NCBI GenBank assembly: GCA_950097015.1
Contig: CATNEN010000012.1
Span: forward strand, 1,054,001 to 1,118,000
Source of the DNA: Macrostomum hystrix
Lineage: Eukaryota > Animalia > Platyhelminthes
Length of the DNA: 64,000 nt
Direction: 5' to 3'
Position 1 is the stretch's first letter; each line of letters opens with the position of its first letter. Below, one piece after another: positions 48,421 to 64,000 of the stretch. The position numbers and the translations under genes are program-made. The notes beneath the pieces are model-generated. The model was not told where the DNA came from and did no database searches. It saw only the letters and a list, made by a program, of their open reading frames with translations.

Positions 48421-50008
48421 TAGATGCAAGTTTTAGATGTACATTCAGGCCCCAAACTCTCTCCTCTCCTATACGCCTGCCTTCCCTATGTCAGTTTTAG
48501 ATGTACATTCAGGCCCCAAACTCTCTCTTCTCCTATACGCCTGCCTTCCCTATGTCAGTTTTAGATGTACATTCAGGCCCCAAACTCTCTCCTCTCCTAT
48601 ACGCCTGCCTTCCCTATGTCAGTTTTAGATGTACATTCAGGCCCCAAACTCTCTCCTCTCCTATACGCCTGCCTTCCCTATGTCAGTTTTAGATGTACAT
48701 TCAGGCCCCAAACTCTCTCCTCTCCTATACGCCTGCCTTCCCTATGTCAGTTTTAGATGTACATTCAGGCCCCAAACTCTCTCCTCTCCTATACGCCTGC
48801 CTTCCCTATGTCAGTTTTAGATGTACATTCAGGCCCCAAACTCTCTCCTCTCCTATACGCCTGCCTTCCCTATGTCAGTTTTAGATGTACATTCAGACTC
48901 CAAACTCTCTCCTCTCCAATACGCCTGCCTTCTCTATGTCAGTTTTAGATGTACATTCAGACTCCAAACTCTCTCCTCTCCTATACGCCTGCCTTCCCTA
49001 TGTCAGTTTTAGATGTACATTCAGATCCCAAACTCTCTCCTCTCCTATACGCCTGCCTTCTCTATGTCAGTTTTAGATGTACATTCAGACTCCAAACTTT
49101 CTCCTCTCCAATACGCCTGTCTTCCCTATGTCAGTTTTAGATGTACATTCAGGCCCCAAACTCTCTCCTCTCCTATACGCCTGCCTTCCCTATGTCAGTT
49201 TTAGATGTACATTCAGGCCCCAAACTCTCTCCTCTCCTATACGCCTGCCTTCCCTATGTCAGTTTTAGATGTACATTCAGGCCCCAAACTCTCTCCTCTC
49301 CTATACGCCTGCCTTCCCTATGTCAGTTTTAGATGTACATTCAGGCCCCAAACTCTCTCCTCTCCTATACGCCTGCCTTCCCTATGTCAGTTTTAGATGT
49401 ACATTCAGACTCCAAACTCTCTCCTCTCCAATACGCCTGCCTTCTCTATGTCAGTTTTAGATGTACATTCAGACTCCAAACTCTCTCCTCTCCTATACGC
49501 CTGCCTTCCCTATGTCAGTTTTAGATGTACATTCAGATCCCAAACTCTCTCCTCTCCTATACGCCTGCCTTCTCTATGTCAGTTTTAGATGTACATTCAG
49601 ACTCCAAACTTTCTCCTCTCCAATACGCCTGTCTTCCCTATGTCAGTTTTAGATGTACATTCAGATCCCAAACTCTCTCCTCTCCTATACGCCTGCCTTC
49701 TCTATGTCAGTTTTAGATGTACATTCAGACTCCAAACTCTCTCCTCTCCAATACGCCTGTCTTCCCTATGTCAGTTTTAGATGTACATTCAGACCCCAAA
49801 CTCTCTCCTCTCCTATACGCCTGCCTTCCCTATGTCAGTTTTAGATGTACATTCAGACCCCAAACTCTCTCCTCTCCAATACGCCTGCCTTCCCTATGTC
49901 AGTTTTAGATGTACATTCAGATCCCAAACTCTCTCTTCTCCAATACGCCTGCCTTCCCTATGTCAGTTTTAGATGTACATTCAGATCCCAAACTCTCTCC
50001 TCTCCTAT
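48421..50008. repeat. 64-bp satellite with 8-mer (512-bp) higher-order repeat
   Basis: About 24-25 units; variant pattern at 48821-49012 recurs 512 bp later. Confidence 0.93.
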
Positions 50009-50500
50009 ATATACATTTGTACGTAAATTTTATTTTCTGCTTCGAGTAATAAGTAGTTTAAAACGTTTTTTACTACAGCAAAGCAGCTTGAATCATTAGT
50101 ACGTGTATACATAGTAGCTTAAAGTATGGCTAAATATGGTTAATCTAGCACCCCAAAAACGAAATAAATACGATAAAAAGCTACTAAAAAATAAGAATGC
50201 TAGAACAGCAGCTCAGAATTTCTCAGTATTTTACTTTATTGAAAAGCGAGACGAAATACAAAACATTAGAAAGGAAACAATACAAAGGTTAGACAAGAAT
50301 TAGTCGATAAATAACTGAAAACTCATCGCTGAATACAGATTAGCCTGATAGACACAAGACTCAATAAATATCATAATTGATGGATGACAGGGCTTAATTA
50401 TTAAAGCCCAACAATTTAATGTCGTTTAAGAGAATTTAGGTTAAAAATATATTATAAATTTTGGTGGCACTAAAACACACAAGAAGTGCCAAATTGCTGG

Positions 50501-53500
50501 TCAGTCCATGTGGTGAGCGTGATAGGCTGCGTGCCAGATTTCGCCAGAGTGGCGCAGTGAGCCAATCACATCGCAGAAGGCGCGCCAGAGCGGCTTGATC
50601 TCGTGCCGGATGCCGTACTTCCGGCAAAGGTGCTGCACCTCCGGCTGCACTTTGTAATAGTTGTGCCGCGGCATGGTTGGAAACAGGTGGTGCTCGATTT
50701 GGAAGTTCAGGTGGCCGGTGAACCAATCGTTGAATGGCGATTTTTCAATGTCGCAGGTGGCGTGAAGCTGCAGGGCTAGCCAGGGCTCGGCACGGTCGTG
50801 CTCAATCTCCATTGGAATATGGTTGCTCTGCGACACCCAGGTGAACCTGATGGGATGATGGGATTCAGAAACTCGAGGCCTTGTGTGATCTCTTGGGGAT
50901 CTGAGATAGTGGGATCTTGTGTGATAGCGAGATCTGGGATAGTGGGATCTGAGATAGTGGTATCTTATGTGATAGTGAGATCTGAGATAGTGGGATCTTG
51001 TGTGATAGCGATTTCTGGGATAGTGGGATCTTGTGTGATAGCGATTTCTGGGATAGTGGGATCTTGTGTGATAGTGAGATCTGGGATAGTGGGATCTTGT
51101 GTGATAGCGAGATCTGAGATAGTGGGATCTTGTGTGATAGTGAGATCTGAGATAGTGGTATCTTGTGTGATAGTGAGTTCTGGGATAGTGGGATCTTTTG
51201 TGATAGCGAGATCTGAGATAGTGGTATCATGTGTGATAGCGAGATCTGAGATAGTGGTATCTTGTGTGATAGTGAGATCTGGGATAGTGGGATCTTTTGT
51301 GATAGCGAGATCTGAGATAGTGGGATCTTGTGTGATAGCGAGATCTGGGATAGTGGGATCTTGTGTGATAGCGAGATCTGGGATAGTGGGATCTGAGATA
51401 GTGGTATCTTATGTGATAGTGAGATCTGGGATAGTGGGATCTTGTGTGATAGCGATTTCTGGGATAGTGGGATCTTGTGTGATAGCGATTTCTGGGATAG
51501 TGGGATCTTGTGTGATAGTGAGATCTGGGATAGTGGGATCTTGTGTGATAGCGAGATCTGAGATAGTGGGATCTTGTGTGATAGTGAGATCTGAGATAGT
51601 GGTATCTTGTGTGATAGTGAGTTCTGGGATAGTGGGATCTTTTGTGATAGCGAGATCTGAGATAGTGGTATCATGTGTGATAGCGAGATCTGAGATAGTG
51701 GTATCTTGTGTGATAGTGAGATCTGGGATAGTGGGATCTTTTGTGATAGCGAGATCTGAGATAGTGGGATCTTGTGTGATAGCGAGATCTGGGATAGTGG
51801 GATCTTGTGTGATAGCGAGATCTGGGATAGTGGGATCTGAGATAGTGGTATCTTATGTGATAGTGAGATCTGGGATAGTGGGATCTTGTGTGATAGCGAG
51901 ATCTGGGATAGTGGGATCTTGTGTGATAGCGAGATCTGGGATAGTGGGATCTGAGATAGTGGTATCTTATGTGATAGTGAGATCTGGGATAGTGGGATCT
52001 TTTGTGATAGCGAGATCTGAGATAGTGGGATCTTGTGTGATAGCGAGATCTGGGATAGTGGGATCTTGTGTGATAGCGAGATCTGGGATAGTGGGATCTG
52101 AGATAGTGGTATCTTATGGGATATTGAGATCTGAGATAGTGGTATCATGTGTGATAGCGAGATCTGAGATAGTGGGATCTTGTGTGATAGTGAGATCTGA
52201 GATAGTGGGATCTTGAAGGGATGTTTGAGAAAGTGGAATCAGGAACTAGGTACTTGGTACTTGGAAAGCGTGGGATCTGGGATTTGGGGATCTGGGATAA
52301 TAATGATAATATTATTAGTATTATTGGGATCTAAGATTGAGAATGGTTAGTGATAAGTTAGACTGTCTAAAATAGAGGGTACATTGGGTACTATAAGAAT
52401 AGTAGGATTTTACGGGACAGTGTCATATTTTGGGATACAATGGGATCATCAGGAATAAACTGTTTTTGGGATCAAGATTTTAAAGGACACATTCGCGACA
52501 AAGATCACCAGTAAGGCGTACTTACCAGTGGCTCTCGATCATGCGCACCAGAAAGTAATAGAGAAAGGCGCCACCCATGCCTAGCAGAGGCCTATAGAAT
52601 ATAACGATCTTGGCGAAGAACAGAGCCATGCAGGCCAGGTCAACGTAGCAGCGACGCAAGATGGCGTGCCGAAAGGTGGCAAGCTGAAAGTACACCGGAA
52701 ACAGCAGCGGCGGGCCCACGGCGAAGAAGTAGCGATGCTGAAAGTGATACGGCACGTACGGACTGCGCTTGGCGGCGGCCTCCTTCGGCATGGTCTTGCC
52801 GACAACAAAGAGCGGCTGAATGCGCACGTCCGGGTCTTTGTCCATAACATTGGGCTTGGAGTGGTGCTGATAGTGTAGGTGCTTCCACCAGTGCGCAGAG
52901 GCGCCTTTGAAATAGCTCATTGTGAGCTGATGAAGCCAGCCGTCCCAGCGACGATTGCGAAACACGGACAAATGACCGAAGTCATGCTGCAGCCAGCTAG
53001 CCTGCGGTGCGACAGAATGCGGGTTGGACAAGAATAACATGACTGCGGCAAAGCGAATGACCAGAATAACATGACTGCGGCAAAGCGAATGACCAGAATA
53101 ACATGACTGCGGCAAAGCGAATGACCAGAATAAGATGACTGCGGCAAAGCGAATGACCAGAATAACATGACTGCGGAAAACGAATGACCAGAATAACATG
53201 ACTGCGGCAAAGCGAATGACCAGAATAACATGACTGCGGCAAAGCGAATGACCAGAATAAGATGACTGCGGCAAAGCGAATGACCAGAATAAGATGACTG
53301 CGGCAAAGCGAATGACCAGAATAAGATGACTGCGGCAAAGCGAATGACCAGAATAAGATGACTGCGGCAAAGCGAATGACCAGAATAAGATGACTGCGGC
53401 AAAGCGAATGACCAGAATTAAATGACAGCAACATGTCATACTTAGATGACTTGAATATGAACTAAAATGGTAAATTATATTACCGGATAGGTAGCAGGAA

Positions 53501-54045
53501 GCAGCACTATGAATGACCAGAATGACAAGGTGGCAGTGCATTGACCCACTTACCTGGCTCTGGGCGGTGGCGTAGAGACAGAGGGCCACAATGTAGGGCA
53601 GCCAGCTGGTGCCCCAGAAACGCAGTGAGGCATAGGCCAGGGCCTCCAGAGCAAAGATGTGCGCCAACATCAAAGCAAAAAAAGTCAGGCTAGGCTTAAA
53701 ATAGCCCTTCGAGTGAGCAGTCTCGCGCAGGCGCTCAAAATCGGTTCGCATAGCAACTAGGCGATCGGGATCGTCAGATCTTACTCGACCAATTCGCAGC
53801 GGTGCCAGCCACTTGGCTACAGCTGCCTGATCCAGGTGGAAGGCGCGAAACGCTTCAGTGGCGTCCTGCCCGGCGTAGTGGGAGAGCAGCCGGCTGCCGC
53901 CCGGATGCTTGTGCGCCCAGCGGGTCACATCGTAGACCGAGTTGTCAATCACTAACCAGCGACTGTCTGGCGATGTGTGCCTGCGAATCTCGTCCCAGCT
54001 GAGCTCGCTGTTTTTGTTCATTGAGTTGGCCGATGCAGTGGACAT
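50501..54045 (-). CDS. FADS2: Front-end (delta-5/delta-6 type) fatty acyl desaturase with N-terminal cytochrome b5 domain
   Basis: Exons 54045-53554, 53001-52526, 50846-50501 join in frame (437 aa). HPGG heme motif; His boxes [24 protein letters not shown]1 versus FADS2 specificity cannot be decided from sequence. Confidence 0.93.
50897..52214. repeat. 33-bp minisatellite with 444-bp higher-order duplication (FADS intron 2)
   Basis: Variant gatagcgatttct at 51004 and 51448. Confidence 0.9.
53030..53420. repeat. 32-bp minisatellite (FADS intron 1)
   Basis: (atgactgcggcaaagcgaatgaccagaataac/g)n. Confidence 0.9.
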
Positions 54046-54234
54046 TGCTGCGGCAACGATGTTGCTGTTGCTGCAAAAAAATAATTATTATTTGAACGCT
54101 TTTTAAAACACTTGGTATTAGGTCTTCCAGGGAGGCTTTGCTTTGAAGTAAACTAAAGTCAATATGCATTTATTGCGCCAAAAAGGAATACGTGAGATTC
54201 TGATTCTCTCCACTCTGTCTGTTTCTCATTCCAC

Positions 54235-56020
54235 TCTGTCTGACACTCACTGCACTCTATCTGACACTCACTCCACTCTGTCTGACTCTCACTCCACTCT
54301 GTCGACACTCACTCCACTCTGTCTGACACTCACTCCACTCTGTCTGGCACTCACTCCACTCTGTCTGACTCTCACTACATCCTGTCTGACACTCACTGCA
54401 CCCTTTCTGACTCTCAAATCTGTCTGACCCTCACTACACTGTCTGACACTCACTGCACTCTGTCTGACACTCACTGCACTCTGTCTGACCCTCACTACAC
54501 TGTCTGACACTCACTGCACTCTGTCTGACACTCACTGCACTCTGTCTGACACTCACTGCACTCTGTCTGACACTCACTGCACTCTGTCTGACACTCACTA
54601 CACTCTGTCTGACACTCACTGCACTCTGTCTGACACTCACTACACTCTGTCTGACACTCACTACACTCTGTCTGACACTCACTGCACTCTGTCTGACACT
54701 CACTACACTCTGTCTGACACTCACTGCACTCTGTCTGACACTCACTGCACTCTGTCTGACACTCACTACACTCTGTCTGACACTCACTACACTCTGTCTG
54801 ACACTCACTGCACTCTGTCTGACACTCACTACACTCTGTCTGACACTCACTGCACTCTGTCTGACACTCACTGCACTCTGTCTGACCCTCACTACACTGT
54901 CTGACACTCACTGCACTCTGTCTGACACTCACTGCACTCTGTCTGACACTCACTGCACTCTGTCTGACACTCACTGCACTCTGTCTGACACTCACTGCAC
55001 TCTGTCTGACACTCACTACACTCTGTCTGACACTCACTGCACTCTGTCTGACACTCACTACACTCTGTCTGACACTCACTACATCCTGTCTGACACTCAC
55101 TGCACCCTTTCTGACTCTCAAATCTGTCTGACCCTCACTACACTGTCTGACACTCACTGCACTCTGTCTGACACTCACTGCACTCTGTCTGACCCTCACT
55201 ACACTGTCTGACACTCACTGCACTCTGTCTGACACTCACTGCACTCTGTCTGACACTCACTGCACTCTGTCTGACACTCACTGCACTCTGTCTGACACTC
55301 ACTACACTCTGTCTGACACTCACTGATCTCTGTCTGACACTCACTACACTCTGTCTGACACTCACTGCACTCTGTCTGACACTCACTGCACTCTGTCTGA
55401 CACTCACTACACTCTGTCTGACACTCACTGCACTCTGTCTGACACTCACTGCACTCTGTCTGACACTCACTACACTCTGTCTGACACTCACTGCACTCTG
55501 TCTGACACTCACTACACTCTGTCTGACACTCACTACATCCTGTCTGACACTCACTGCACCCTTTCTGACTCTCAAATCTGTCTGACCCTCACTACACTGT
55601 CTGACACTCACTGCACTCTGTCTGACACTCACTGCACTCTGTCTGACCCTCACTACACTGTCTGACACTCACTGCACTCTGTCTGACACTCACTGCACTC
55701 TGTCTGACACTCACTGCACTCTGTCTGACACTCACTGCACTCTGTCTGACACTCACTACACTCTGTCTGACACTCACTGATCTCTGTCTGACACTCACTA
55801 CACTCTGTCTGACACTCACTGCACTCTGTCTGACACTCACTGCACTCTGTCTGACACTCACTACACTCTGTCTGACAATCACTGCACTCTGTCTGACACG
55901 CACTGCACTCTGTCTGACACTCACTGCACTCTGTCTGACCCTCACTACACTCTGTCTGACCCTCACTACACTCTGTCTGACCCTCACTACACTCTGTCTG
56001 ACCCTCACTCCACTCCGTCT
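54235..56020. repeat. 21-bp minisatellite (tctgtctgacactcactgcac) with block duplications
   Basis: Marker variant ccctttctgactctcaaatc at 54401, 55105 and 55559. Confidence 0.92.
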
Positions 56021-56784
56021 GACTCTGTTTTGTACTCTCTCCACTATGTCCGGCTTTGAATCAGTCGTGACAGGAAAGAGCATACCGAATGCTGGTTGCT
56101 GACGAAAATCTAATGGAAGCCGGTAACAGGGCTTGGTGGCAGAGCTTGAGAAGACCTGCTATAAACCAACAAATCAATAGTATCTGACCAGAAAAAGCTG
56201 ACAGTGGCACTTTCTTGATATGGCGACTGAGACTAGGAATAAGGGCGGCAAATATAACACAGGAGCGCTCGCACACACAAGAGACTATAGGGAGGGACAG
56301 GTAAGAAAAAAAGCCTTTAAATTCTGAAGAAGATATCACCTAGGCGTCACAGCGAGATAGAAGGGCATTGAGACTTTGACTGCGCCACCAGGGAGGGCTC
56401 TAGTGCAATGTGCTTATCACCAAGCCTTCCATGCGCAGTCAGCAGTCCACTTCACTTACTAAACTAAACAGGTTAGAAATAGGAGTCAAAGTTCATGATT
56501 GAAGGAAACACGCAGTCTTTAGGCGGCGTGAAAAAATAACTAAACTGATTGTCAATATTTACGTGACCAATAAAGTACTTCCCTTTGAAAACAATTCTAT
56601 AAAAAAGCAAAATGTCACTAACTCAATCCAAAGTTGCTGGAGAGTCAAAGAAAAATGCTAATTATTTTCAAGTTTATATATTTAACAAACCCACGCGCAC
56701 ACATCATGATTGGCTGCTGTAGCATGAAACTTCAGAGACTATATGAAATGCAACAACAGGTCAACAATTTATCATATAATTAGG

Positions 56785-57785
56785 CTAGGGCGATTCTTTG
56801 GACTTCTTTGTCGAATCCTCGACGTCGCCGCTGCAATTGGGCGAAGCCGAATGCTCGCCAATCTCTTCTTCAATGTCGCCGGCGTCCTTCAGGGCGGAGC
56901 TGTCGCATTCGGCGGCCTTCCTCTTAGCTCGAGGCTTCGGACCCCAATTTGGTGGCGGCTTGTGGAATCTGTCGGGATAATTGTTAGCAAATCCACCATT
57001 AACAGTTGTGGAATTAACAATTCCACCACTACCAAGCCACTTTGCCGCCCGTTTTATACCAAGGGGGGAATTCTCCCTGAAGAGTTTTTCGGCAGCGCCC
57101 GAACGCTAACTGCGTTTGGGTGGTGACTGATTGGTTGACAGACTATGTGAGGGTGTCCATCTAGTGGTTGAAGTTCCAGCAGTCCGTCTAGATAAAGGGT
57201 GACATGCTGATAAAGTTTGAAGGCCTGGCAAGGCCGCACGCACTGAGGCGCAGTGCGAGTTCGTGTATTAGGGGTACAAAATACACAAGCCCTTATGGGA
57301 AAAATCTGAACTTTGGCCAGAACCGTTGAATATCTCGACGGTCTGAAAAGCTGGCTCGTGTGCTCGTGTTGCTTCGTTTGGGTGCAGCAAAAAAAAATTT
57401 CTGGTGGGGAAATCCCCCCTTGGTAAGTTCTACTGTTAAAGAATGCTGCTGTCCCATTCAGCCACAATGTCTGATTATGTACCTCATCAGTTTGTCAACC
57501 TTAGACGGAGGCTCAGCCATCGGGTGCAGCGTGAAGTCCACCGTCGAGTCTCTATTAGGCCGGTCGATTAGCAAAGCCCTGGGCAGGGAGCCTTCGGTCA
57601 TGTGTCTCTCGGAAAGTACCTGGCCAGTTTGCTGATGATGCGCCCGAACCACATCCCACAGGTAGCTAGCCGGGGCGTCGGTTTTTATAGCGGCACCGTC
57701 GCAATGAGATATTGAAGCACGGTAGCCAGCGTTGAGCAGGGCGGAGCGGACAACTCGCATAGGCATGGGACTGCCTTTCACGGCG
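56785..57785 (-). CDS. TRMT1: tRNA (guanine-26 N2,N2)-dimethyltransferase, last two exons; upstream exons lie beyond the transposon or window
   Basis: Exons 57785-57483 and 56968-56785 join in phase: RSALLNAGYRASISHCDGAAIKTDAPASYLWDVV...DFTLHPMAEPPSK...LMRFHKPPPNWGPKPRAKRK, matching the Trm1 C-terminal signature (SALL.AG...SH....AIKTDAP, F..HP.A.P.S, NWGP). Confidence 0.78.
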
Positions 57786-57882
57786 CTGAGCGGGTAGGAT
57801 AAGATTGGGAACATGTCTTATTAGAGCATAAACTCGTAGAGACTGAATTAAAAATGGACGCTACACATTTTACCATTTACTG

Positions 57883-57995
57883 TTGCTAGGGTATACGAAC
57901 TGTGGCACGATGGTTGCTAGGGTATACGAACTGTGGCACGATGGTTGCTAGGGTATATGAGCTGAGGCACGATGGTTGCTAGGGTATATGAGATG
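57883..57995. repeat. 31-bp tandem repeat, 3-4 copies, abutting the transposon end
   Basis: (gatggttgctagggtatacgaactgtggcac)n. Confidence 0.8.
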
Positions 57996-58764
57996 TGGCC
58001 CGCTTGGCTTTTTAGTCCGGATTTTGTCCGCCATTCGTCCGCTTTTGGGGTCCTTTCCGGACCAAATCGGGATTTTATCCGCATTTCATCCGGATTTCAC
58101 GTCCGGACCAAAATGTGGGAGAAATTCCGGGCCAAATCCGGACAAAGGGGTTTCGCAAACCACTTTTGATCCGGATCTCATCCGCAATTTGATCCGAACT
58201 TTTGAGCGGACGAAAAGTCGGACTGCAGTCCGGATGAAAGTAGGGCGAAAATGTATTTTGTCCGGAAATTTCATCCGCTTTGTCTCCCGCCTGTTCAACC
58301 GCAATTGAGCCGGACAAAGTTCCGGACGAAGATCGGACAAATATTAAGATTGCTGTCTTACTTAATGTAGTCATCAGCTGTACCCACTGTACTGTCTGTA
58401 CTGACAGACTGCTTATTCGTATAGTATTCGTATGCAAATCCCGGATACGCTAATAAATGATGTCATTCTTGTGCAGCGCGCACCGATTCAATTTGGCACT
58501 TTGACAGCTCGCCAGCCTTCTTTATTTGCATGATAATGAAGAGTTCTAGGTTGGCATTTCATAGGCATATTGTCAAGGGACTTAAACTGTACAGTGATGT
58601 ACACGAAGCTCTTTTCCATTTTGCCGTACGTTTTGTAGGGTAATAGCTTCGCCTCCAAAAAGAGTAATAATTACGGTGCCACTGTTAACATGAGACACAA
58701 AGGTAAAGCTTTCTTTAAAGAATTCGGTCATTCCAGCGCACCACGTTTCTGCTGTCAGCTACAT

Positions 58765-61676
58765 ATGGAGGAGCAGGACGCACAGCATCGCAGGCGCCTC
58801 TGGATGAGGGCGTACATGCAGAAGCGAAGGGCGGCTCGCACACGCTCTCGGTCACCTATGTCTGCCTCTGGCTCATTGCCCGCCCATCCGGACCACACCC
58901 CACCCAGCGCAGATGACGGCTCAGACGGCAGTGCAGATGACGGCAGCGCCCATGACGGCTCAGACGGCAGCGCCGATGATGGCTCAGACGGCAGCGCCGA
59001 GGATGGCTCAGACGGCAGTGCAGATGACGGCAGCGCCGATGACGGCTCAGACGGCAGTGCAGATGACGGCAGCGCCCATGACGGCTCAGACGGCAGCGCC
59101 GATGATGGCTCAGACGGCAGCGCCGATGAGGGCTCAGACGGCAGTGCAGATGACGACAGCGCAGATGACGGCAGCGCCGATGCTGGCTCAGACGGCAGCG
59201 CCGATGACGGCTCAGACGGCGGCACCGATGACGGCAGCGCCGATGACAGCAGCGCCGAGGACGCCGGTGAAATTAACATCCCCGTGCCCCATGACATGCT
59301 GGAAAATGCCTGGCACGATGCCCTGCCTTTGACAATCGGCGAAGCGCTGTGCGAGGTGAATTCCTGTGCATTAGACCTAAATGTGTCACGGGACGGATTT
59401 ACCAGACTGTTGGCAATGCTGCATCGCCTAGTGCCCGGCAATAGGCTGCCTAGATCAGGACGAGCCGCTCGCGATGCAACTAAGTCGATTCAGACCATGC
59501 CGGGCACGACAAAGTGCTTCATAGTGTGCAATGAATGCAACAGGAGTTCGCCTGGGGTGTGCCGAGCAGGTCTCACAACTTGCGTGCACTGCGGTGCGAC
59601 CAACGTGGCGAACTTCTGGTGTTTTGATGTGCCCAGACAGCTGAAGACGCTCATAGAGTGCCGTAGCATGTTGGACCACGTCGTTTTCCCGGCCGACAGA
59701 GTAGTGCCACCCGACGTAGTTCACTTTGCCACTAGTGAGCTGTAAATTCAGTTCACGGATGGCGTCGATGTTCCGAGCCGCTGCGACCTGTCCTACACTT
59801 TCTGCTCAGACGGCTTTCCACTGTTTAGGACAAGTTCGGTTGAAGTTTGTCCCGTCTACCTTAGTGTCAATGTGGTACATGACCGTTTTAAGCTGCGCTA
59901 CGTAGTAATTTGCGGCGTTTGGGCCGGAAAGAAGAAGATCCATGCGAGTGCATTCCTCCCATTGGTCGTGGCCACCCTTAATGACCTACCGGGCTAGAGT
60001 TTGTTGACCAACAAGGCGTTCAGCGCCGTCTACGGTTTCATCCGCTAATCGCGATGTTTGACGCTCCAGCCAGAGCTGACGCGCTGTGCATGAAGCGCTT
60101 CTCCGCAAAATATGGATGCGATAAATGTTATCTGCTGACGTCCCTACACCCCTCGAAGCACGGTCGAGTGTTCGGCGTACAACTAACTCCTGCCATGCAG
60201 GGAACCGCCCGTCGCCTTGGCTGCACCCAAACGCTGGTTCGGTCTATGAATGACACATTTACTCTAGCTGAGCGCCACTCGCAGCACAACCTGAACTCAC
60301 GCACCGACGTGCTAGGCGTCCGTGGACACTCGCCGCTCGGGCGACTGTGCGGGTTCGACTTTATCAGGGGGACACCACCGTGCTTTCTACACCAATTGTG
60401 CTCGGGATTGGTTCGCTACATCCTGTTTCAAATGTTTCTCATGCGACATGAGAACCCTGACCGGGGTGATACCAACTGCCCTGATCTGCACGGTCGGATT
60501 GCCGTAGTACAGAGTCGCCTGGAGAACATTCGCCTGCCCAGTTGCGTGCAGCGCCACACGGTGCGTGAGCTAAGAGACCTCCGTCACCTTCGTGGCCACG
60601 AGCTAGAAGTCTGGATCCTAGCTTTCGACCCGATGGTGCTGGGGGGATTTCTGCCACCGGAACACTACTGGCACCTGTTGCTCCTATCCTCCGCTGTATT
60701 CTGGATGACCTTGGAGGGTGCCCCAAGAAGCGAGTTGCGGCATGTCGAAATAACTCTCCGGCATTTCCATGCCGCCCTGCCGCGCCTATACTCTCTGAGG
60801 GCCCTCACGTACAACAGCCACCAGGTGTGCTGTCACATGCTGCCATCCGTTCTGCTAGTCGGGCCACTGCACAGACAGTCAGCAGGACTCTTTGAAACCA
60901 TGCACTCCCGTTTGCGTCGTCGGATTCACGGTTCCAGGCGCACTGATATCGAATTGGTTGGCGCAGTGGAGAGGGAAGTCGCAGTAATCCAGGCTGAAGA
61001 TTTTGTCAACGACGGTGTCCGCCACCCTGAGCCACGCGGTAAACGCAGGACAGAGTCACTCGTGATTGAAGGAGTGCTGTTGCGACGTCCGCAGGGTGCA
61101 ACGGACGGCTGGCGCACTGTGTCACTGCCCACCGGGGTGACCATCGTGGTATTCGAGTCCGCGCCCACGGAGGGCGGCGCCGGTAGAGGAAGGTCCACCT
61201 CCAGCTTTGTGGCACTTCGAGGACCAGAAACCACGTCCTTCAATTTCGCACGTGTTGAGGCACTCAGCGTCAACCAAGAAAACCGCGTCATGGTCTCTCT
61301 CGTAGCGCTACCCATTGAACCTCAGCTTGACCCACTGGAGGCACTTTGCGCGGTCTCTGCAGCGTCACCTGACCGTGGGTGCCGCTTCGCTCATTTGCGG
61401 CGCCTTATGGTTGACCCGTTCGTTGACAGGCTGATTCTCGGTGCCGCTGTACGCGTGCCTCTGGCCGACGTTGTCGGTGTATGCGTCGTTTCAGACACCA
61501 AATGGGTTTTTCTTAGCAGTTTAGTCAAGCCGGTTCTGTCCAACGACAAAAATGTAAACTTAAGGAAAAAGTATACTATAAAAGAAAATACTATAGGTTA
61601 TAGTATTATCTATACAATATATGCTATACCATTATCAAACGAATATCGTATACGTTTACATTCATATGATACGTAA
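58765..61676 (+). pseudogene. EnSpm/CACTA-type transposase with an in-frame stop (59743-59745) and a frameshift (about 59990)
   Basis: CNEC/CVHC zinc knuckle, FDVPRQLK; reading continues in frame past the TAA into CSDGFPLF (D1) and ICGVWAGKKK; frame change into FDAPAR (D2), GCDKC, FLHQLCSG, LRGHEL, LTYNSH, GPL...SAGLFE (E). Confidence 0.8.
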
Positions 61677-61886
61677 TGTAAATAGAGACTTGAACGAACA
61701 ATGTAACGTAATCTACTGGACACTAAATAAATCCGTCATGCTTTTGACTTACGTAGAAGTCCGCGCTGCTGGCCTGACTTCTCATTTCTGGTCACGGTTC
61801 CTCACTACCCACTACATAATTACAAATATGGCATAGGGAAACATGGAGACCTAAGCGCTGCATAAATCTTGCCATATTTCAGCCGA

Positions 61887-62495
61887 ATGGATGCCTCCGG
61901 ACCTATTCAGTGGTCGCGGATTTTGGACGACGTCCTCCTGGACAGCAACTTCTTGGACTTCTTGGACGACGATGATGCCGAGACGACCCTCGGGGAGAGC
62001 GACCGCCGATCACCGGGAGAAGGAGCCTGGCCCGTCGAGGGCCAGAACTTCTTGGACCCGGACGACTCGCTCGCGCTATGTCCGCCTGCTGCCAGCAGTA
62101 CACAGGCACCTGCTTTACCAAGTAGCCCTCGTGTACCCGTTAATTACACGTGGGCGGACTATAACCGGTTGCCCGACGAGCCGCCGCCCAATTTCGACTC
62201 TCGCCGACCCGAGGAGCGCCGCCGAATCCCCGCTCAGACGTGCGCGGATTGCGAGAGTTGGTTCGCGGCGTTGCCACCGGCAGAGCGTGAGCGACGACTG
62301 CAGTGCCACGGGCGCAATCGACATAGCCCAGTTATCCAGTCGGCCGACTTCTTCGCTATTGCCATGCCGCCGAGCCCACCACCCGCACCGATAGAGTACA
62401 TGAAGGTGATGAAGCGCCGTCGGCGCCCCCTAAGAGACCTGCAGTCTGCAGGGCAGTCGGTAAAGAACCAGTCGGTTGATGAGAAAGACGACTGA
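61887..62495 (+). CDS. Transposon-embedded ORF with CtIP/Sae2-like C-terminal domain
   Basis: 202 aa from ATG 61887. EERRRIPAQTCADCESWFAALPPAERERRLQCHGRNR aligns without gaps to the remembered CtIP C-terminal core [37 protein letters not shown]. Confidence 0.7.
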   Translation: MDASGPIQWSRILDDVLLDSNFLDFLDDDDAETTLGESDRRSPGEGAWPVEGQNFLDPDDSLALCPPAASSTQAPALPSSPRVPVNYTWADYNRLPDEPPPNFDSRRPEERRRIPAQTCADCESWFAALPPAERERRLQCHGRNRHSPVIQSADFFAIAMPPSPPPAPIEYMKVMKRRRRPLRDLQSAGQSVKNQSVDEKDD

Positions 62496-62770
62496 AAGCC
62501 GATGTAGCCATTATGATGCGTGTACGTGACATGTGTTTGCATATGATCTTGGGAAGTAAAAATTGAAGTTCGGCTCACAACTGGCAAGACTGGAACACAG
62601 AGACTTCATTTCTGTTATTTTCGCATTCACTCATGTTACTCCATAGACTCTATTAGACTTCTTGGTTACATTAGGTTAACCTTCGGTGGTTAGTTAACAA
62701 GGTTACCTCCGGTTACCATGAAAATTATTATATACATCAACCGTCATCATCATCAGTTGCAGCTGCTACA

Positions 62771-64000
62771 ATGACCAAGCCTACGACGTCCAATCGAGCA
62801 GCATCGAAGCAAAAGGGCGGGCTTCAGCGAGGAAAAGTAGGGAAGGCCAAGAAGCAAAAGGAGAACACTCCGCCCGAACCAACGGGCGTGCCTGCTTCGA
62901 GCGACACGCCTCCTCCCACCGCGCCACGTGACGCAGCTGACGCGCTGGAAGAATCGGTCACAGACCAGAATGGCCAGACCAGCAGCACAGAGGACATGGT
63001 GCCTTATAAGTCGGAGAGCGTGGCGCGTTACTTTCTGTTCAAATACAGCTGTTACCATGACCGCACGGAAGTAGTGTCTACCGACGGTGAGAGCAGTGCT
63101 CCCTTCATTGTCGCGCGCAGTCGGGACTCACCGATCCCTGTTGCCGTAGGGAGCCGTGTGCTAATAGTCACAGCTAAAAAAAACCGCACCTCGGCGAAAA
63201 GCTGGTCCGGAGACCTGCTTCGCGGCCCGTTTTCTACGAAAAGTGAGGCCACGGGTGCCGCCCTGTTAACCAACGTGCACGCCCCGCCGCTAGAGCTGCC
63301 TCGTGCCTGCGCCTCCTGTCGGGGGTTACTTGTGGAACTGCAGAGAGAGAAAAGTCTGACCGACACACTGCGTGAGTAGATGCTAGTAGATGCTAGCTTT
63401 TCCTGCTGAAAAATGGTGCATCATATTACAATAGTGTAATGATGAGACTTATTGCGTGTACCCTTTTGCAACAGATTGTGAGTTTTATGTCTCTTTGTGA
63501 CATCCAACAGGTTCTGAAGTTCGACTGCTTCGTACAAGCGAAAACCCGTTGCGCGAGCAGGTTCGACATCTGACGCACGGGAGCTCTGTTCAGTCTAAGG
63601 TTGAGAGTCGACTTCTCCTGCAGCTAGAGCAGGAGCAGGGCAGGAGCCTAAATATGCAGCGCAATGCGGAGAAGGCGAACGAGTGCCTCGTCCGCGCCTC
63701 GCATTACCTGCTGGCTTTTAATTCGGCATCGACATCTGCCAGCGCTCTGGCCGGACTCGTGCATCCGGCGGCGCCACCGGGGGCGGCGGCGGCTGCTGTG
63801 GCTGCAACGGCGTCTAGCGGCGATCCGGACGCGGAATCCGATCCGGGGGATGAGTCGGAGAGTTACCGCATTACGGACTTCTTAGCGGACAGTCACCTGT
63901 CTGTGTCGCAGACACGCGCTTTGAGCGACGCATGCGACAGGGCGGCATCTCAAGCAGGACCTTCTACGGAAGCTGTCGCTCGGGTATCGCTTTCCGACCA
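62771..64000 (+). CDS. Transposon accessory (TnpA-position) protein, spliced, runs off the window
   Basis: Exon 62771-63371 (c|GTGAGT), acceptor caacAG at 63510, and exon from 63511 open in phase to the window end; basic N-terminus, CASC motif, probable coiled coil. Confidence 0.6.

What the first reader, a model, noticed from the sequence alone, without database searches (positions are those of the whole stretch)
61887..62495. A CACTA/EnSpm-like transposon appears to carry its own CtIP/Sae2-like DNA end-processing factor
Seen: a 202-aa ORF sits between the transposase and the accessory ORF, in the same orientation. Its segment at about 62202-62370 reads RRPEERRRIPAQTCADCESWFAALPPAERERRLQCHGRNRHSPVIQSADFFAIAMP. 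Known (recalled, not searched): the human CtIP C-terminal core [40 protein letters not shown] aligns without gaps at about 17/40 identities. Both CxxC and the RxR motif are kept; the motif is RNR as in yeast Sae2 and is followed by an S-P site reminiscent of the Sae2 CDK site. This domain activates Mre11-Rad50 to clip blocked and hairpin-capped DNA ends. The N-terminal tetramerising coiled coil of host CtIP is absent. Inference: CACTA excision is thought to leave hairpin-capped donor ends, so the element may have captured an MRN activator to steer repair of its excision site toward resection/HR (restoring the copy), or a dominant-negative mimic. I know of no described transposon-borne CtIP domain.
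Basis: partly seen in the sequence, partly recalled or inferred. Interest (0 to 1): 0.92.

Follow-up and report, generated by a model that had tools for sequence, protein, structure and literature searches.

The report
Transposon copy carrying a CtIP-tail gene
A multi-copy cut-and-paste transposon in this animal genome carries, between its transposase and a third gene, a small gene that is a true relative of the tail of the DNA-break-processing factor CtIP/Sae2. This particular copy is decayed, and whether the gene helps the element is still untested.

Summary
The 202-aa ORF at 61887-62495 is real. Its last ~110 residues are a genuine homologue of the CtIP/Sae2 C-terminal region.
- The ORF itself fails the Pfam SAE2 model.
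- Exhaustive phmmer links it to P0002 (E 4.9e-10), which passes SAE2.
- A profile-profile comparison gives 99.4% probability.
- The six best Foldseek hits in Swiss-Prot are all RBBP8 C-termini.

The ORF lies inside a mobile element.
- Contigs from two runs leave the window sequence exactly at 57999, into two different unrelated flanks.
- A TCCGGA-type subterminal repeat cluster follows the end.
- Assembler depth in the element is about 3 times that of the flanking TRMT1 exon.
- The transposase resembles EnSpm/CACTA-Plavaka enzymes.
- The terminus is CCCGC, not CACTA, and the right end lies beyond the window.

This copy is decayed. The transposase has a private stop and a 7-nt deletion.

The nearest relative is a Macrostomum lignano gene, P0001, at 46-51% identity with synonymous sites saturated. 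That argues for long-term constraint on the element-borne gene. A role with Mre11-Rad50 at the element's breaks is inference only. The scan had already noted this family on other DNA of the same genome (s1-258387, s1-253525, s1-286098).

The parts
57999..58008 (+). Left terminus of the element (CCCGCTTGGC)
   Evidence: Contigs in runs X1 and X2 match the window from 57998/57999 rightwards. To the left they carry two different unrelated sequences, and the window has a third flank (table 7). This is the only exact copy of the decamer in the window.
58010..58341 (.). Subterminal repeat region: about 20 TCCGGA/TCCGC-type motifs in both orientations
   Evidence: the repeat finder gives families D1-D10 and inverted pairs I1-I15. 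Motif density is 15 per 500 nt here against a window median of 0, and it is the only such cluster in the window.
58690..59745 (+). Transposase, N-terminal part (acidic DGS repeats, Cys-rich zinc-ribbon-like stretch); ends at a private TAA stop at 59743-59745
   Evidence: ORF. All four runs read C at 59745, which makes the codon TAC, Tyr. There is a weak zinc_ribbon_6 match.
59746..59986 (+). Transposase, middle piece, still open in the same frame; holds the CSDGFPLF motif
   Evidence: The translation is open from 59746 to 59986. All four runs carry 7 extra nt behind 59986, which would put the downstream ORF into this frame.
59985..61676 (+). Transposase, C-terminal part (MFDAPARA...YGCDKCY), frame-shifted in this copy by the 7-nt deletion
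   Evidence: ORF. The nearest ESM-atlas clusters score 0.97-0.92 and include Transposase_21, Plavaka and DUF4218. The structural neighbours of the top hit include plant CACTA En/Spm transposases at TM 0.81-0.88. No Pfam hit.
61881..61882 (+). AG of a splice-acceptor-like site (tttcAG) 4 nt upstream of the ORF's ATG
   Evidence: Read from the sequence. Whether it is used is not shown.
61887..62495 (+). CtIP-tail ORF, 202 aa, intact
   Evidence: Homology evidence.
62142..62444 (+). CtIP/SAE2 C-terminal homology region (residues 86-186)
   Evidence: phmmer stretch 86-186 against P0001 residues 281-387; alignments A1 and A2; hhalign.
62241..62252 (+). CxxC motif (C119-A-D-C122)
   Evidence: Invariant columns in A1, A2 and the four-sequence alignment.
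62313..62327 (+). R-N-R-H-S in this copy; R-H-R-H-R in other copies
   Evidence: 62316 A>C and 62325 A>C in contigs of X1, X2 and X7. Codon effects are N144H and S147R.
62771..63371 (+). Third gene, putative exon 1 (basic N-terminus); GTGAGT donor at 63372
   Evidence: ORF, sequence. Assembler depth equals that of the rest of the element. Splicing is not shown: contigs of X2 and X11 run on into the putative intron.
63511..64000 (+). Third gene, putative exon 2 (coiled-coil-like); open to the window end
Evidence: The frame is open from 63513 to 63998. No Pfam hit in the part inside the window.
57483..57785 (-). Flanking host exon of TRMT1 (tRNA m2,2G methyltransferase); the element lies antisense in the upstream intron
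   Evidence: Pfam TRM at 36.9 bits against a cut-off of 27. An X2 RNA contig joins 56968 to 57483 and leaves the window near 57786 for sequence not present in the window.

Best explanation
Shown:
- The region from 57999 to beyond 64000 is one decayed copy of a young, transcribed, multi-copy DNA transposon. It is inserted antisense in a TRMT1 intron of an animal that is probably a Macrostomum-like flatworm.
- The family carries three same-strand genes: an EnSpm/CACTA-Plavaka-like DDE transposase, a 202-aa protein, and a third gene that looks spliced.
- The first 85 residues of the 202-aa protein are acidic and have no detectable relative. Its last ~110 residues are a true homologue of the whole CtIP/Sae2 C-terminal region (CxxC, RHR, FF/FW-x3-hPP, basic KRRRRPL tail).
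- The N-terminal tetramerising coiled coil is absent.

Inferred:
- The CtIP tail was taken from, or shares an origin with, a flatworm-lineage gene like M. lignano P0001.
- It has been kept under constraint inside the element. Protein motifs and the reading frame survive although synonymous sites are saturated.
- Most likely mechanism: it is an element-encoded accessory that engages the host Mre11-Rad50(-Nbs1) complex at the breaks the transposase makes, whether hairpin-capped or transposase-bound ends. It would act as a CtIP-like cofactor uncoupled from the usual CDK switch, so that ends are clipped and resected and the donor site is repaired from the sister copy.

My odds: true CtIP-tail homologue 0.95; cargo of the transposon 0.85; kept by selection 0.6; MRN-activating cofactor, the stated mechanism, about 0.3.

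In this window's copy the protein has RHR changed to RNR and the transposase is broken, so this copy probably does nothing.
For: Homology:
- phmmer and BLASTP link the ORF to P0002, which passes Pfam SAE2.
- hhalign 99.4%.
- the top six Foldseek hits are RBBP8 C-termini.
- the atlas neighbours are SAE2 clusters at 0.91.

Mobile element:
- two foreign flanks start at 57998/57999.
- the flank contig has depth 81.7 in X1, against 198-335 for element contigs across all three genes. Differences between copies are 1-2%.
- subterminal repeats.
- transposase neighbours.

Transcription:
- X2 is an RNA run, because it holds a spliced TRMT1 contig.
- In X2 the element has depth 5-20 while the intron flank at 57800-57999 has 0.6.
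- Four metatranscriptome runs also hold the ORF.

Constraint:
- Against the P0001 exon, pN is 0.37 and pS is 0.79, which is saturated.
- In the quartet tree the ORF groups with P0001 with support 94, and the ORF's branch is 0.73 substitutions per site. The ORF is nevertheless intact, with 28 columns invariant across three proteins.

Biological plausibility:
- In yeast, repair of the hairpins left by Ac/Ds excision gave no revertants when Mre11 or Sae2 was deleted (PMC3299998).
Against: - There is no functional test of any kind.
- The ORF fails the Pfam SAE2 model.
- It lacks the oligomerisation domain. It also lacks the S/T-P site that P0002 and P0003 keep four residues before F-W. From memory, that site corresponds to human T847 and yeast S267, whose phosphorylation is needed for MRN/MRX stimulation.
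- Between copies the changes look neutral: 7 non-synonymous to 3 synonymous in this ORF and 14 to 4 in the transposase. The family is too young for copy intactness to mean much.
- CACTA elements are known gene-fragment collectors, so a passenger is a real alternative.
- The right end, TIR pair and target-site duplication were not seen because they lie beyond the window.
- The host's own CtIP in this genome was not located, so a recent capture from an unsampled closer gene cannot be excluded.
- Hairpin formation by EnSpm/CACTA transposases is inferred from footprints, not shown biochemically (my knowledge).
Confidence: 0.35

Rival explanations
1. Passenger. The CtIP tail is a transduplicated piece of a host gene picked up by a CACTA-type element, as plant CACTA and Pack-type elements often do. 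It is amplified with the element and has no function for element or host.
For: Differences between copies are neutral-looking, 7 non-synonymous to 3 synonymous. The family is young, with 1-2% divergence, so intact ORFs are expected by default. Only the tail of the protein is present, the canonical S/T-P site is missing, and this copy even has RHR changed to RNR.
Against: Synonymous sites against the nearest known gene are saturated (pS 0.79) while pN is 0.37. The ORF is open and keeps every invariant motif. The ORF's branch of 0.73 substitutions per site would have destroyed a neutral ORF. The ORF has its own ATG and an added acidic N-terminus, sits in an operon-like position, and is present in RNA at transposase-like depth.
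Confidence: 0.3
2. Decoy. The tail-only protein cannot tetramerise and lacks the CDK switch. It therefore competes with host CtIP for Mre11-Rad50 or DNA ends, blocks resection, and pushes the element's breaks toward end joining, or shields transposition intermediates from MRN clipping.
For: The N-terminal coiled coil is absent and so is the S/T-P site kept in P0002 and P0003. CxxC, RHR (in other copies) and the basic tail are retained. The evidence for constraint is the same as for the best explanation.
Against: P0001, which sits in an ordinary host gene neighbourhood, also lacks the coiled coil and the S/T-P site. These losses may therefore be a lineage trait rather than a decoy design. Blocking resection would lose the copy-number gain that comes from sister-templated repair (inference). 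Nothing was tested.
Confidence: 0.2
3. Host gene, not cargo. The ORF is a host CtIP-like gene or exon that merely lies between transposon fragments.
For: The right end of the element was not seen. There is an acceptor-like AG 4 nt before the ATG. The nearest relative, P0001, is a normal multi-exon gene between host genes.
Against: The ORF has the same roughly 3-fold excess assembler depth as the transposase and the third gene in X1, and the same 1-2% variant pattern. It lies antisense inside a TRMT1 intron that is spliced out as a whole. The scan noted the same module in other places of the genome (unchecked leads).
Confidence: 0.05
4. Reverse direction. The element-borne gene is the older one, and P0001 in M. 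lignano is a domesticated copy derived from such an element.
For: P0001 and the ORF share derived features against P0002 and P0003: FF instead of FW, loss of the S/T-P site, and no N-terminal coiled coil. They group together in the quartet tree.
Against: P0001 has three exons, host neighbours, and no transposase or subterminal repeats within 10 kb. A four-sequence tree cannot give direction.
Confidence: 0.1

Closest known systems
CtIP/RBBP8, Sae2, Ctp1, COM1 (Pfam SAE2, PF08573): cofactor of Mre11-Rad50 for clipping blocked or hairpin DNA ends
   Same: The whole C-terminal region is homologous: CxxC, RHR (in other copies), the aromatic pair followed by hPP, and the basic tail.
   Different: Only 202 aa, with no coiled-coil oligomerisation domain. 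No S/T-P site at the position kept in P0002 and P0003. Scores below the Pfam threshold. Encoded inside a transposon. This copy reads RNR.
Macrostomum lignano protein P0001 (GCA_002269645.1, contig NIVC01002929)
   Same: It is the nearest relative, at 46-51% identity over the tail. It shares FF for FW, loss of the S/T-P site, and absence of an N-terminal coiled coil.
   Different: It is a 395-aa, three-exon gene between an acetyl-CoA synthetase gene and an EMP24 gene, with no transposase or subterminal repeats nearby.
EnSpm/CACTA (TNP2, Transposase_21) and Plavaka DNA transposons
   Same: Transposase neighbours in feature and structure space. The DGF...DAPA...GC..C motif pattern matches by my reading. 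There are dense subterminal short repeats in both orientations and additional same-strand genes downstream of the transposase.
   Different: The terminus is CCCGC, not CACTA. There is no Pfam Transposase_21 hit on the broken pieces. The TSD and right TIR were not seen. The accessory genes are a CtIP tail and a gene reported (unchecked) to be a BEN gene, instead of TnpA.
Host-gene capture by DNA transposons (Pack-MULEs, plant CACTA transduplicates; Helitrons with RPA-like genes; fungal KDZ/EnSpm-type elements with TET/JBP genes, PMC12730594)
   Same: A host-type gene or gene part travels inside a DNA transposon.
   Different: Here the cargo is a DNA-end-processing cofactor domain kept as a free-standing ORF. 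I found no paper describing that.
Phage-encoded modulators of the bacterial Mre11-Rad50 homologue and other end-processing enzymes (for example lambda Gam; recalled)
   Same: In concept, a mobile element encodes a protein aimed at the host's DNA-end machinery.
   Different: They are unrelated in sequence, they are inhibitors, and they are prokaryotic.

Membership tests
SAE2/CtIP C-terminal domain (PF08573) | Scores above the Pfam gathering threshold | tested here: not met
   No hit even at E<=10 for the whole ORF or for the 67-aa core. The relative P0002 passes at 37.6 against 19.8. P0001 (14.3) and P0003 (16.2) fall just below.
SAE2/CtIP C-terminal domain (PF08573) | Significant sequence or profile similarity to accepted members | tested here: met
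   phmmer E 4.9e-10 to P0002 in 1.84 billion proteins. BLASTP 6e-19. hhalign 99.4%, E 1.3e-21.
SAE2/CtIP C-terminal domain (PF08573) | CxxC motif | tested here: met
   C119-A-D-C122, invariant in all aligned sequences.
SAE2/CtIP C-terminal domain (PF08573) | RHR motif | tested here: not met
   This copy reads RNR. Contigs of other copies in X1, X2 and X7 read RHR (62316 A>C), so the family meets the feature and this copy does not.
SAE2/CtIP C-terminal domain (PF08573) | S/T-P (CDK) site four residues before the F-W motif (human T847 and yeast S267 by recall) | tested here: not met
   P0002 has T-P-P-H-F-W and P0003 has S-P-Q-E-M-W. The ORF has Q-S-A-D-F-F and P0001 has Q-A-P-N-F-F. A PP(S/T)P site seven residues further on is kept in the ORF, P0001 and P0002.
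SAE2/CtIP C-terminal domain (PF08573) | Predicted structure resembles the CtIP C-terminus | tested here: inconclusive
   The model is weak (pLDDT 67.7, pTM 0.29). Foldseek E-values are 0.04-0.4 and TM about 0.3, yet the six best of 550,129 entries are all RBBP8 C-termini.
Full-length CtIP/Sae2/Ctp1 orthologue | N-terminal coiled-coil oligomerisation domain | tested here: not met
   Residues 1-85 are acidic and have no Pfam hit. P0002 has a coiled-coil N-terminus, by several coiled-coil Pfam matches.
Full-length CtIP/Sae2/Ctp1 orthologue | Stimulates Mre11-Rad50 endonuclease; needed for hairpin and blocked-end processing | not testable with these tools
   Needs biochemistry or genetics.
EnSpm/CACTA transposon | Transposase_21/TNP2-type DDE transposase | tested here: inconclusive
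   No Pfam hit on any of the three pieces. ESM-atlas neighbours at 0.92-0.97 include Transposase_21, Plavaka and DUF4218 clusters. The top hit's structure matches plant CACTA transposases at TM 0.81-0.88.
EnSpm/CACTA transposon | Termini beginning CACTA/CACTG | tested here: not met
   The left end reads CCCGCTTGGC.
EnSpm/CACTA transposon | Arrays of short subterminal repeats in direct and inverted orientation | tested here: met
   58010-58341.
EnSpm/CACTA transposon | Terminal inverted repeat pair and 3-bp target-site duplication | not testable with these tools
   There is no reverse-complement terminus between 58009 and 64000. The right end lies beyond the window.
EnSpm/CACTA transposon | Mobile: same end at different insertion sites, several copies | tested here: met
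   Three different left flanks (the window, X1 and X2), with element depth about 3 times flank depth in X1. Assembler depth is only a rough guide.
Transduplicated gene fragment (Pack-type passenger) | Host-derived fragment evolving without constraint | tested here: inconclusive
   Between copies there are 7 non-synonymous and 3 synonymous changes, which is neutral-like but covers only 10 changes. Against P0001, pN is 0.37 and well below the saturated pS of 0.79, with the ORF intact.

The most novel reading that the evidence does not exclude
A family of animal EnSpm-like transposons encodes and maintains its own CtIP-derived cofactor (or antagonist) of the host Mre11-Rad50 complex. This would give the element control over how its own excision and insertion breaks are processed. 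It would be the first eukaryotic transposon known to carry a DNA-end-resection factor.
Probability: 0.4. Interest if true: 0.85.

Novelty: new variant of a known kind. Interest (0 to 1): 0.62.

Why it matters
How cut-and-paste transposons get the host to repair the breaks they make is known only in pieces, and always through host factors. An element that carries its own version of the CtIP/Sae2 tail would make the link directly testable. The ends left by an EnSpm-type transposase could be probed with the element's own factor. A natural tail-only CtIP would also show which parts of CtIP are enough to engage Mre11-Rad50. If it is only a passenger, it is one more captured gene piece. Even then, a capture that survived saturation of silent sites would need explaining.

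Tried and rejected
- Pfam on the ORF, its 67-aa core, the transposase pieces and both exons of the third gene: no relevant hit.
- PDB sequence search with the ORF and with profile A1: nothing relevant.
- Word-indexed homologue searches with the ORF, with A1 and with the P0002 tail: only P0003 was new.
- Scans of metagenome contigs with the CtIP-tail profile and with the transposase, and of viral contigs with the CtIP-tail profile: no relatives.
- Exact-protein look-ups for the ORF and both transposase ORFs: not on record.
- Search for a right terminus (reverse complement of CCCGCTTGGC, up to 1 mismatch) or a second subterminal cluster in the window: none downstream of the left end.
- The structure model is too weak for fold-based claims beyond the ranking of hits.
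- Chance resemblance is rejected.
- The reading that whole-genome duplication alone explains the extra copies is rejected, because other copies have unrelated flanks exactly at the element end.
- Splice joints for the ORF or the third gene could not be seen: the runs are kept as contigs.
- Organism identity (Macrostomum-like) rests only on the nearest protein relative and on the pattern of runs. It was not verified.

Full report
**The observation**

It sits 210 nt downstream of a long transposase-like frame (58690-61676). A third same-strand ORF starts 275 nt downstream of it, at 62771.

**Is it a CtIP/Sae2 tail?**

Direct Pfam scans fail: there is no SAE2 hit for the ORF or its core even at E<=10. 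There is no PDB sequence match either. Three independent lines nevertheless show homology.

- *Sequence search.* An exhaustive phmmer search of 1.84 billion representative proteins returns only two hits.
  - P0001 is 395 aa, E 3.4e-18, 51% identity over ORF residues 86-186.
  - P0002 is 315 aa, E 4.9e-10. It has an N-terminal coiled coil and passes Pfam SAE2 at 37.6 bits against a cut-off of 19.8.
  - The pairwise BLASTP to P0002 is 6e-19 over 148 residues.
- *Profile comparison.* A profile of the ORF plus P0001 matches a profile of P0002 plus P0003 with hhalign probability 99.4%, E 1.3e-21, over 109 columns. P0003 is an NCBI-sourced 418-aa CtIP-like protein that scores 16.2 bits on SAE2.
- *Structure.* The AlphaFold model of the tail is weak (pLDDT 67.7, pTM 0.29), as expected for a region that is not a compact fold. 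Even so, Foldseek against 550,129 Swiss-Prot models ranks six RBBP8/CtIP proteins first: mouse, zebrafish, two Xenopus species, rat and human. Each is aligned at its C-terminus, for example human residues 800-883.

The ESM atlas neighbours of both the ORF and P0001 are SAE2 clusters at 0.90-0.91.

The homology covers the whole C-terminal region: Y-x-x-x-[YF]-N-x-[LI]-P, CxxC, RHR, the aromatic pair followed by hPP-x-P, and the basic KRR(R/H)RPL tail.

**Is it inside a mobile element?**

- Laying contigs of four public runs on 57400-63399 shows that contigs of X1 and X2 match the window from 57998/57999 rightwards. To the left they carry two different unrelated sequences. The window has a third flank, a 31-bp tandem repeat.
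- The left end is therefore 57999, CCCGCTTGGC, which is unique in the window.
- A 330-nt array of TCCGGA/TCCGC-type motifs in both orientations follows. It is the only such cluster in the window.
- In X1 the flanking TRMT1-exon contig has word depth 81.7. Element contigs have 198-335 across the transposase, the CtIP ORF and the third gene alike, and differ from the window by 1-2%.
- Assembler depth is a rough measure. Together with the different flanks, it shows several copies at different sites that carry all three genes.
- No right terminus or second subterminal array lies in the window, so the element runs beyond 64000.

**The transposase, and the state of this copy**

The ESM atlas places the 540-aa ORF next to unnamed arthropod clusters (0.97) and to Transposase_21, Plavaka and DUF4218 clusters (0.89-0.95). 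The top hit's structure matches plant CACTA En/Spm transposases at TM 0.81-0.88. Pfam finds nothing on the pieces, and the terminus is not CACTA. I therefore call it EnSpm/CACTA-Plavaka-like, not a proven member.

This copy is broken in three places.
- The TAA at 59743-59745 is TAC in all four runs.
- All four runs have 7 extra nt behind 59986.
- X1 and X2 have 25 extra nt behind 61497.

The frame stays open between these points. In other copies the transposase is therefore probably one frame of roughly 1000 codons.

**What the other copies say about the CtIP ORF**

- Ten differences are listed inside the ORF: 7 non-synonymous and 3 synonymous.
N144 is H in X1, X2 and X7, so the family motif is RHR. 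S147 is R, so the S-P site after the motif is private to this copy.
- Some copies carry an in-frame 147-nt tandem duplication, 61994-62137 plus GTT.
- The transposase shows 14 non-synonymous and 4 synonymous changes.
- Such neutral-looking decay after insertion is what any transposon copy shows. It says little about family-level function.

**Relation to host genes**

- P0001 comes from assembly GCA_002269645.1, which Macrostomum lignano papers cite as that species' genome.
- It is a three-exon gene between an acetyl-CoA synthetase gene and an EMP24 gene. No transposase, third-gene homologue or subterminal repeats lie within 10 kb.
- In a four-sequence tree the ORF groups with P0001, with support 94. 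The branches are long, 0.73 and 0.54 substitutions per site.
- Codon comparison with the P0001 exon gives pS 0.79, which is saturated, and pN 0.37.
- The ORF and P0001 share FF for FW, loss of the S/T-P site that P0002 and P0003 keep four residues before F-W, and lack of an N-terminal coiled coil.
- Either an old capture from this lineage has since been kept under constraint, or P0001 itself descends from such an element. A recent capture from an unsampled closer gene cannot be excluded, because I could not search the window's own genome.

**Expression**

- X2 is an RNA run. One of its contigs joins 56968 directly to 57483, then leaves the window near 57786 for sequence not found in the window.
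- This also shows that the element lies antisense inside a TRMT1 intron that is spliced out. The exon is confirmed by Pfam TRM.
- In X2 the element has depth 5-20 while the intron flank at 57800-57999 has 0.6. In the DNA run X1 the same comparison is roughly 2:1 (about 290 against 148). Some copies are therefore transcribed.
- Four wastewater metatranscriptome runs also hold 25-38% of the ORF's words.
- The contigs also cover non-coding element DNA and the putative intron of the third gene. No mature mRNA structure is shown.
- AG acceptor-like sites lie 4 nt and 9 nt before the ATGs of the second and third genes. Spliced-leader trans-splicing and operons are documented in M. lignano (PMC8629364). 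An operon-like expression is therefore an idea to test, not a result.

**Mechanism**

What is shown is anatomy and homology. The rest is inference.

CtIP/Sae2 tails activate Mre11-Rad50 to clip hairpin or blocked ends (established knowledge). In yeast, no revertants were recovered from Ac/Ds excision hairpins when Mre11 or Sae2 was deleted (PMC3299998).

I think the most likely reading is an element-encoded accessory acting on host MRN at the element's own breaks. My odds are:
- maintained gene of some kind, about 0.6;
- MRN activator, about 0.3;
- decoy, about 0.2;
- plain passenger, about 0.3.

**Novelty and earlier notes**

Searches of the paper library found no report of a transposon-borne CtIP/SAE2 domain.

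The scan itself had already noted this family on other DNA of the same genome (s1-258387, s1-253525, s1-286098). It had also noted the same cassette at this window's edge (s1-300458). I used those notes as leads only.

This window adds four things:
- the exact left end;
- evidence that the copy is decayed;
- correction of the RNR and S-P readings;
- the link to M. lignano P0001.

Noticed in passing
window 57882-57999: A 31-bp tandem repeat (3.8 copies) abuts the left end of the element directly. Its last unit runs into the terminus (..TGTGGC|CCG against the unit's TGTGGCACG). Other copies do not have it.
   Followed up: partly
window 52522-54045 (-): A front-end fatty-acid desaturase (Cyt-b5 plus FA_desaturase). 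Its 507-aa mechanical ORF reads straight through a 32-bp x 12.5 minisatellite at 53027-53426. The minisatellite is probably intronic, or else a repeat expansion inside the gene.
   Followed up: no
window 48429-50009, 50920-52215, 54211-56023: Three large minisatellites: 64 bp x 24.7, 33 bp x 39.5 and 21 bp x 87.6. They give long artefactual ORFs on both strands.
   Followed up: no
runs X7, X8, X9, X21 on window 58050-63037: Wastewater metatranscriptome runs hold contigs 98-99% identical to the element, but none of the TRMT1 flank. Either the animal or a close relative lives there, or there is carry-over between libraries.
   Followed up: no
window 61994-62137: Other copies (X1, X2) carry this stretch twice in tandem with GTT between, an in-frame 49-codon duplication in the acidic N-terminal part of the CtIP-tail ORF.
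   Followed up: partly
L001 10001-13072 (M. lignano P0001): The nearest relative is annotated as an ordinary gene, yet it lacks a CtIP N-terminal coiled coil and the canonical S/T-P site. It may not be the canonical flatworm CtIP and could itself be element-derived.
   Followed up: partly
window 58905-59263: A length-variable acidic DGS/ADDGS repeat lies inside the transposase N-terminus. Depth spikes to about 1000 in X1, and there are indels between copies.
   Followed up: no
window 61875-61886 and 62750-62770: AG acceptor-like sites lie 4 nt and 9 nt upstream of the start codons of the second and third genes, with short spacers of 210 and 275 nt. This suggests an operon-like transcript resolved by trans-splicing (PMC8629364).
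   Followed up: no
window 61497 and 61617: Other copies have 25 nt (X1, X2) and about 100 nt (X2) more than the window, in the AT-rich tail of the transposase frame. The true C-terminus of the transposase is therefore uncertain.
   Followed up: no
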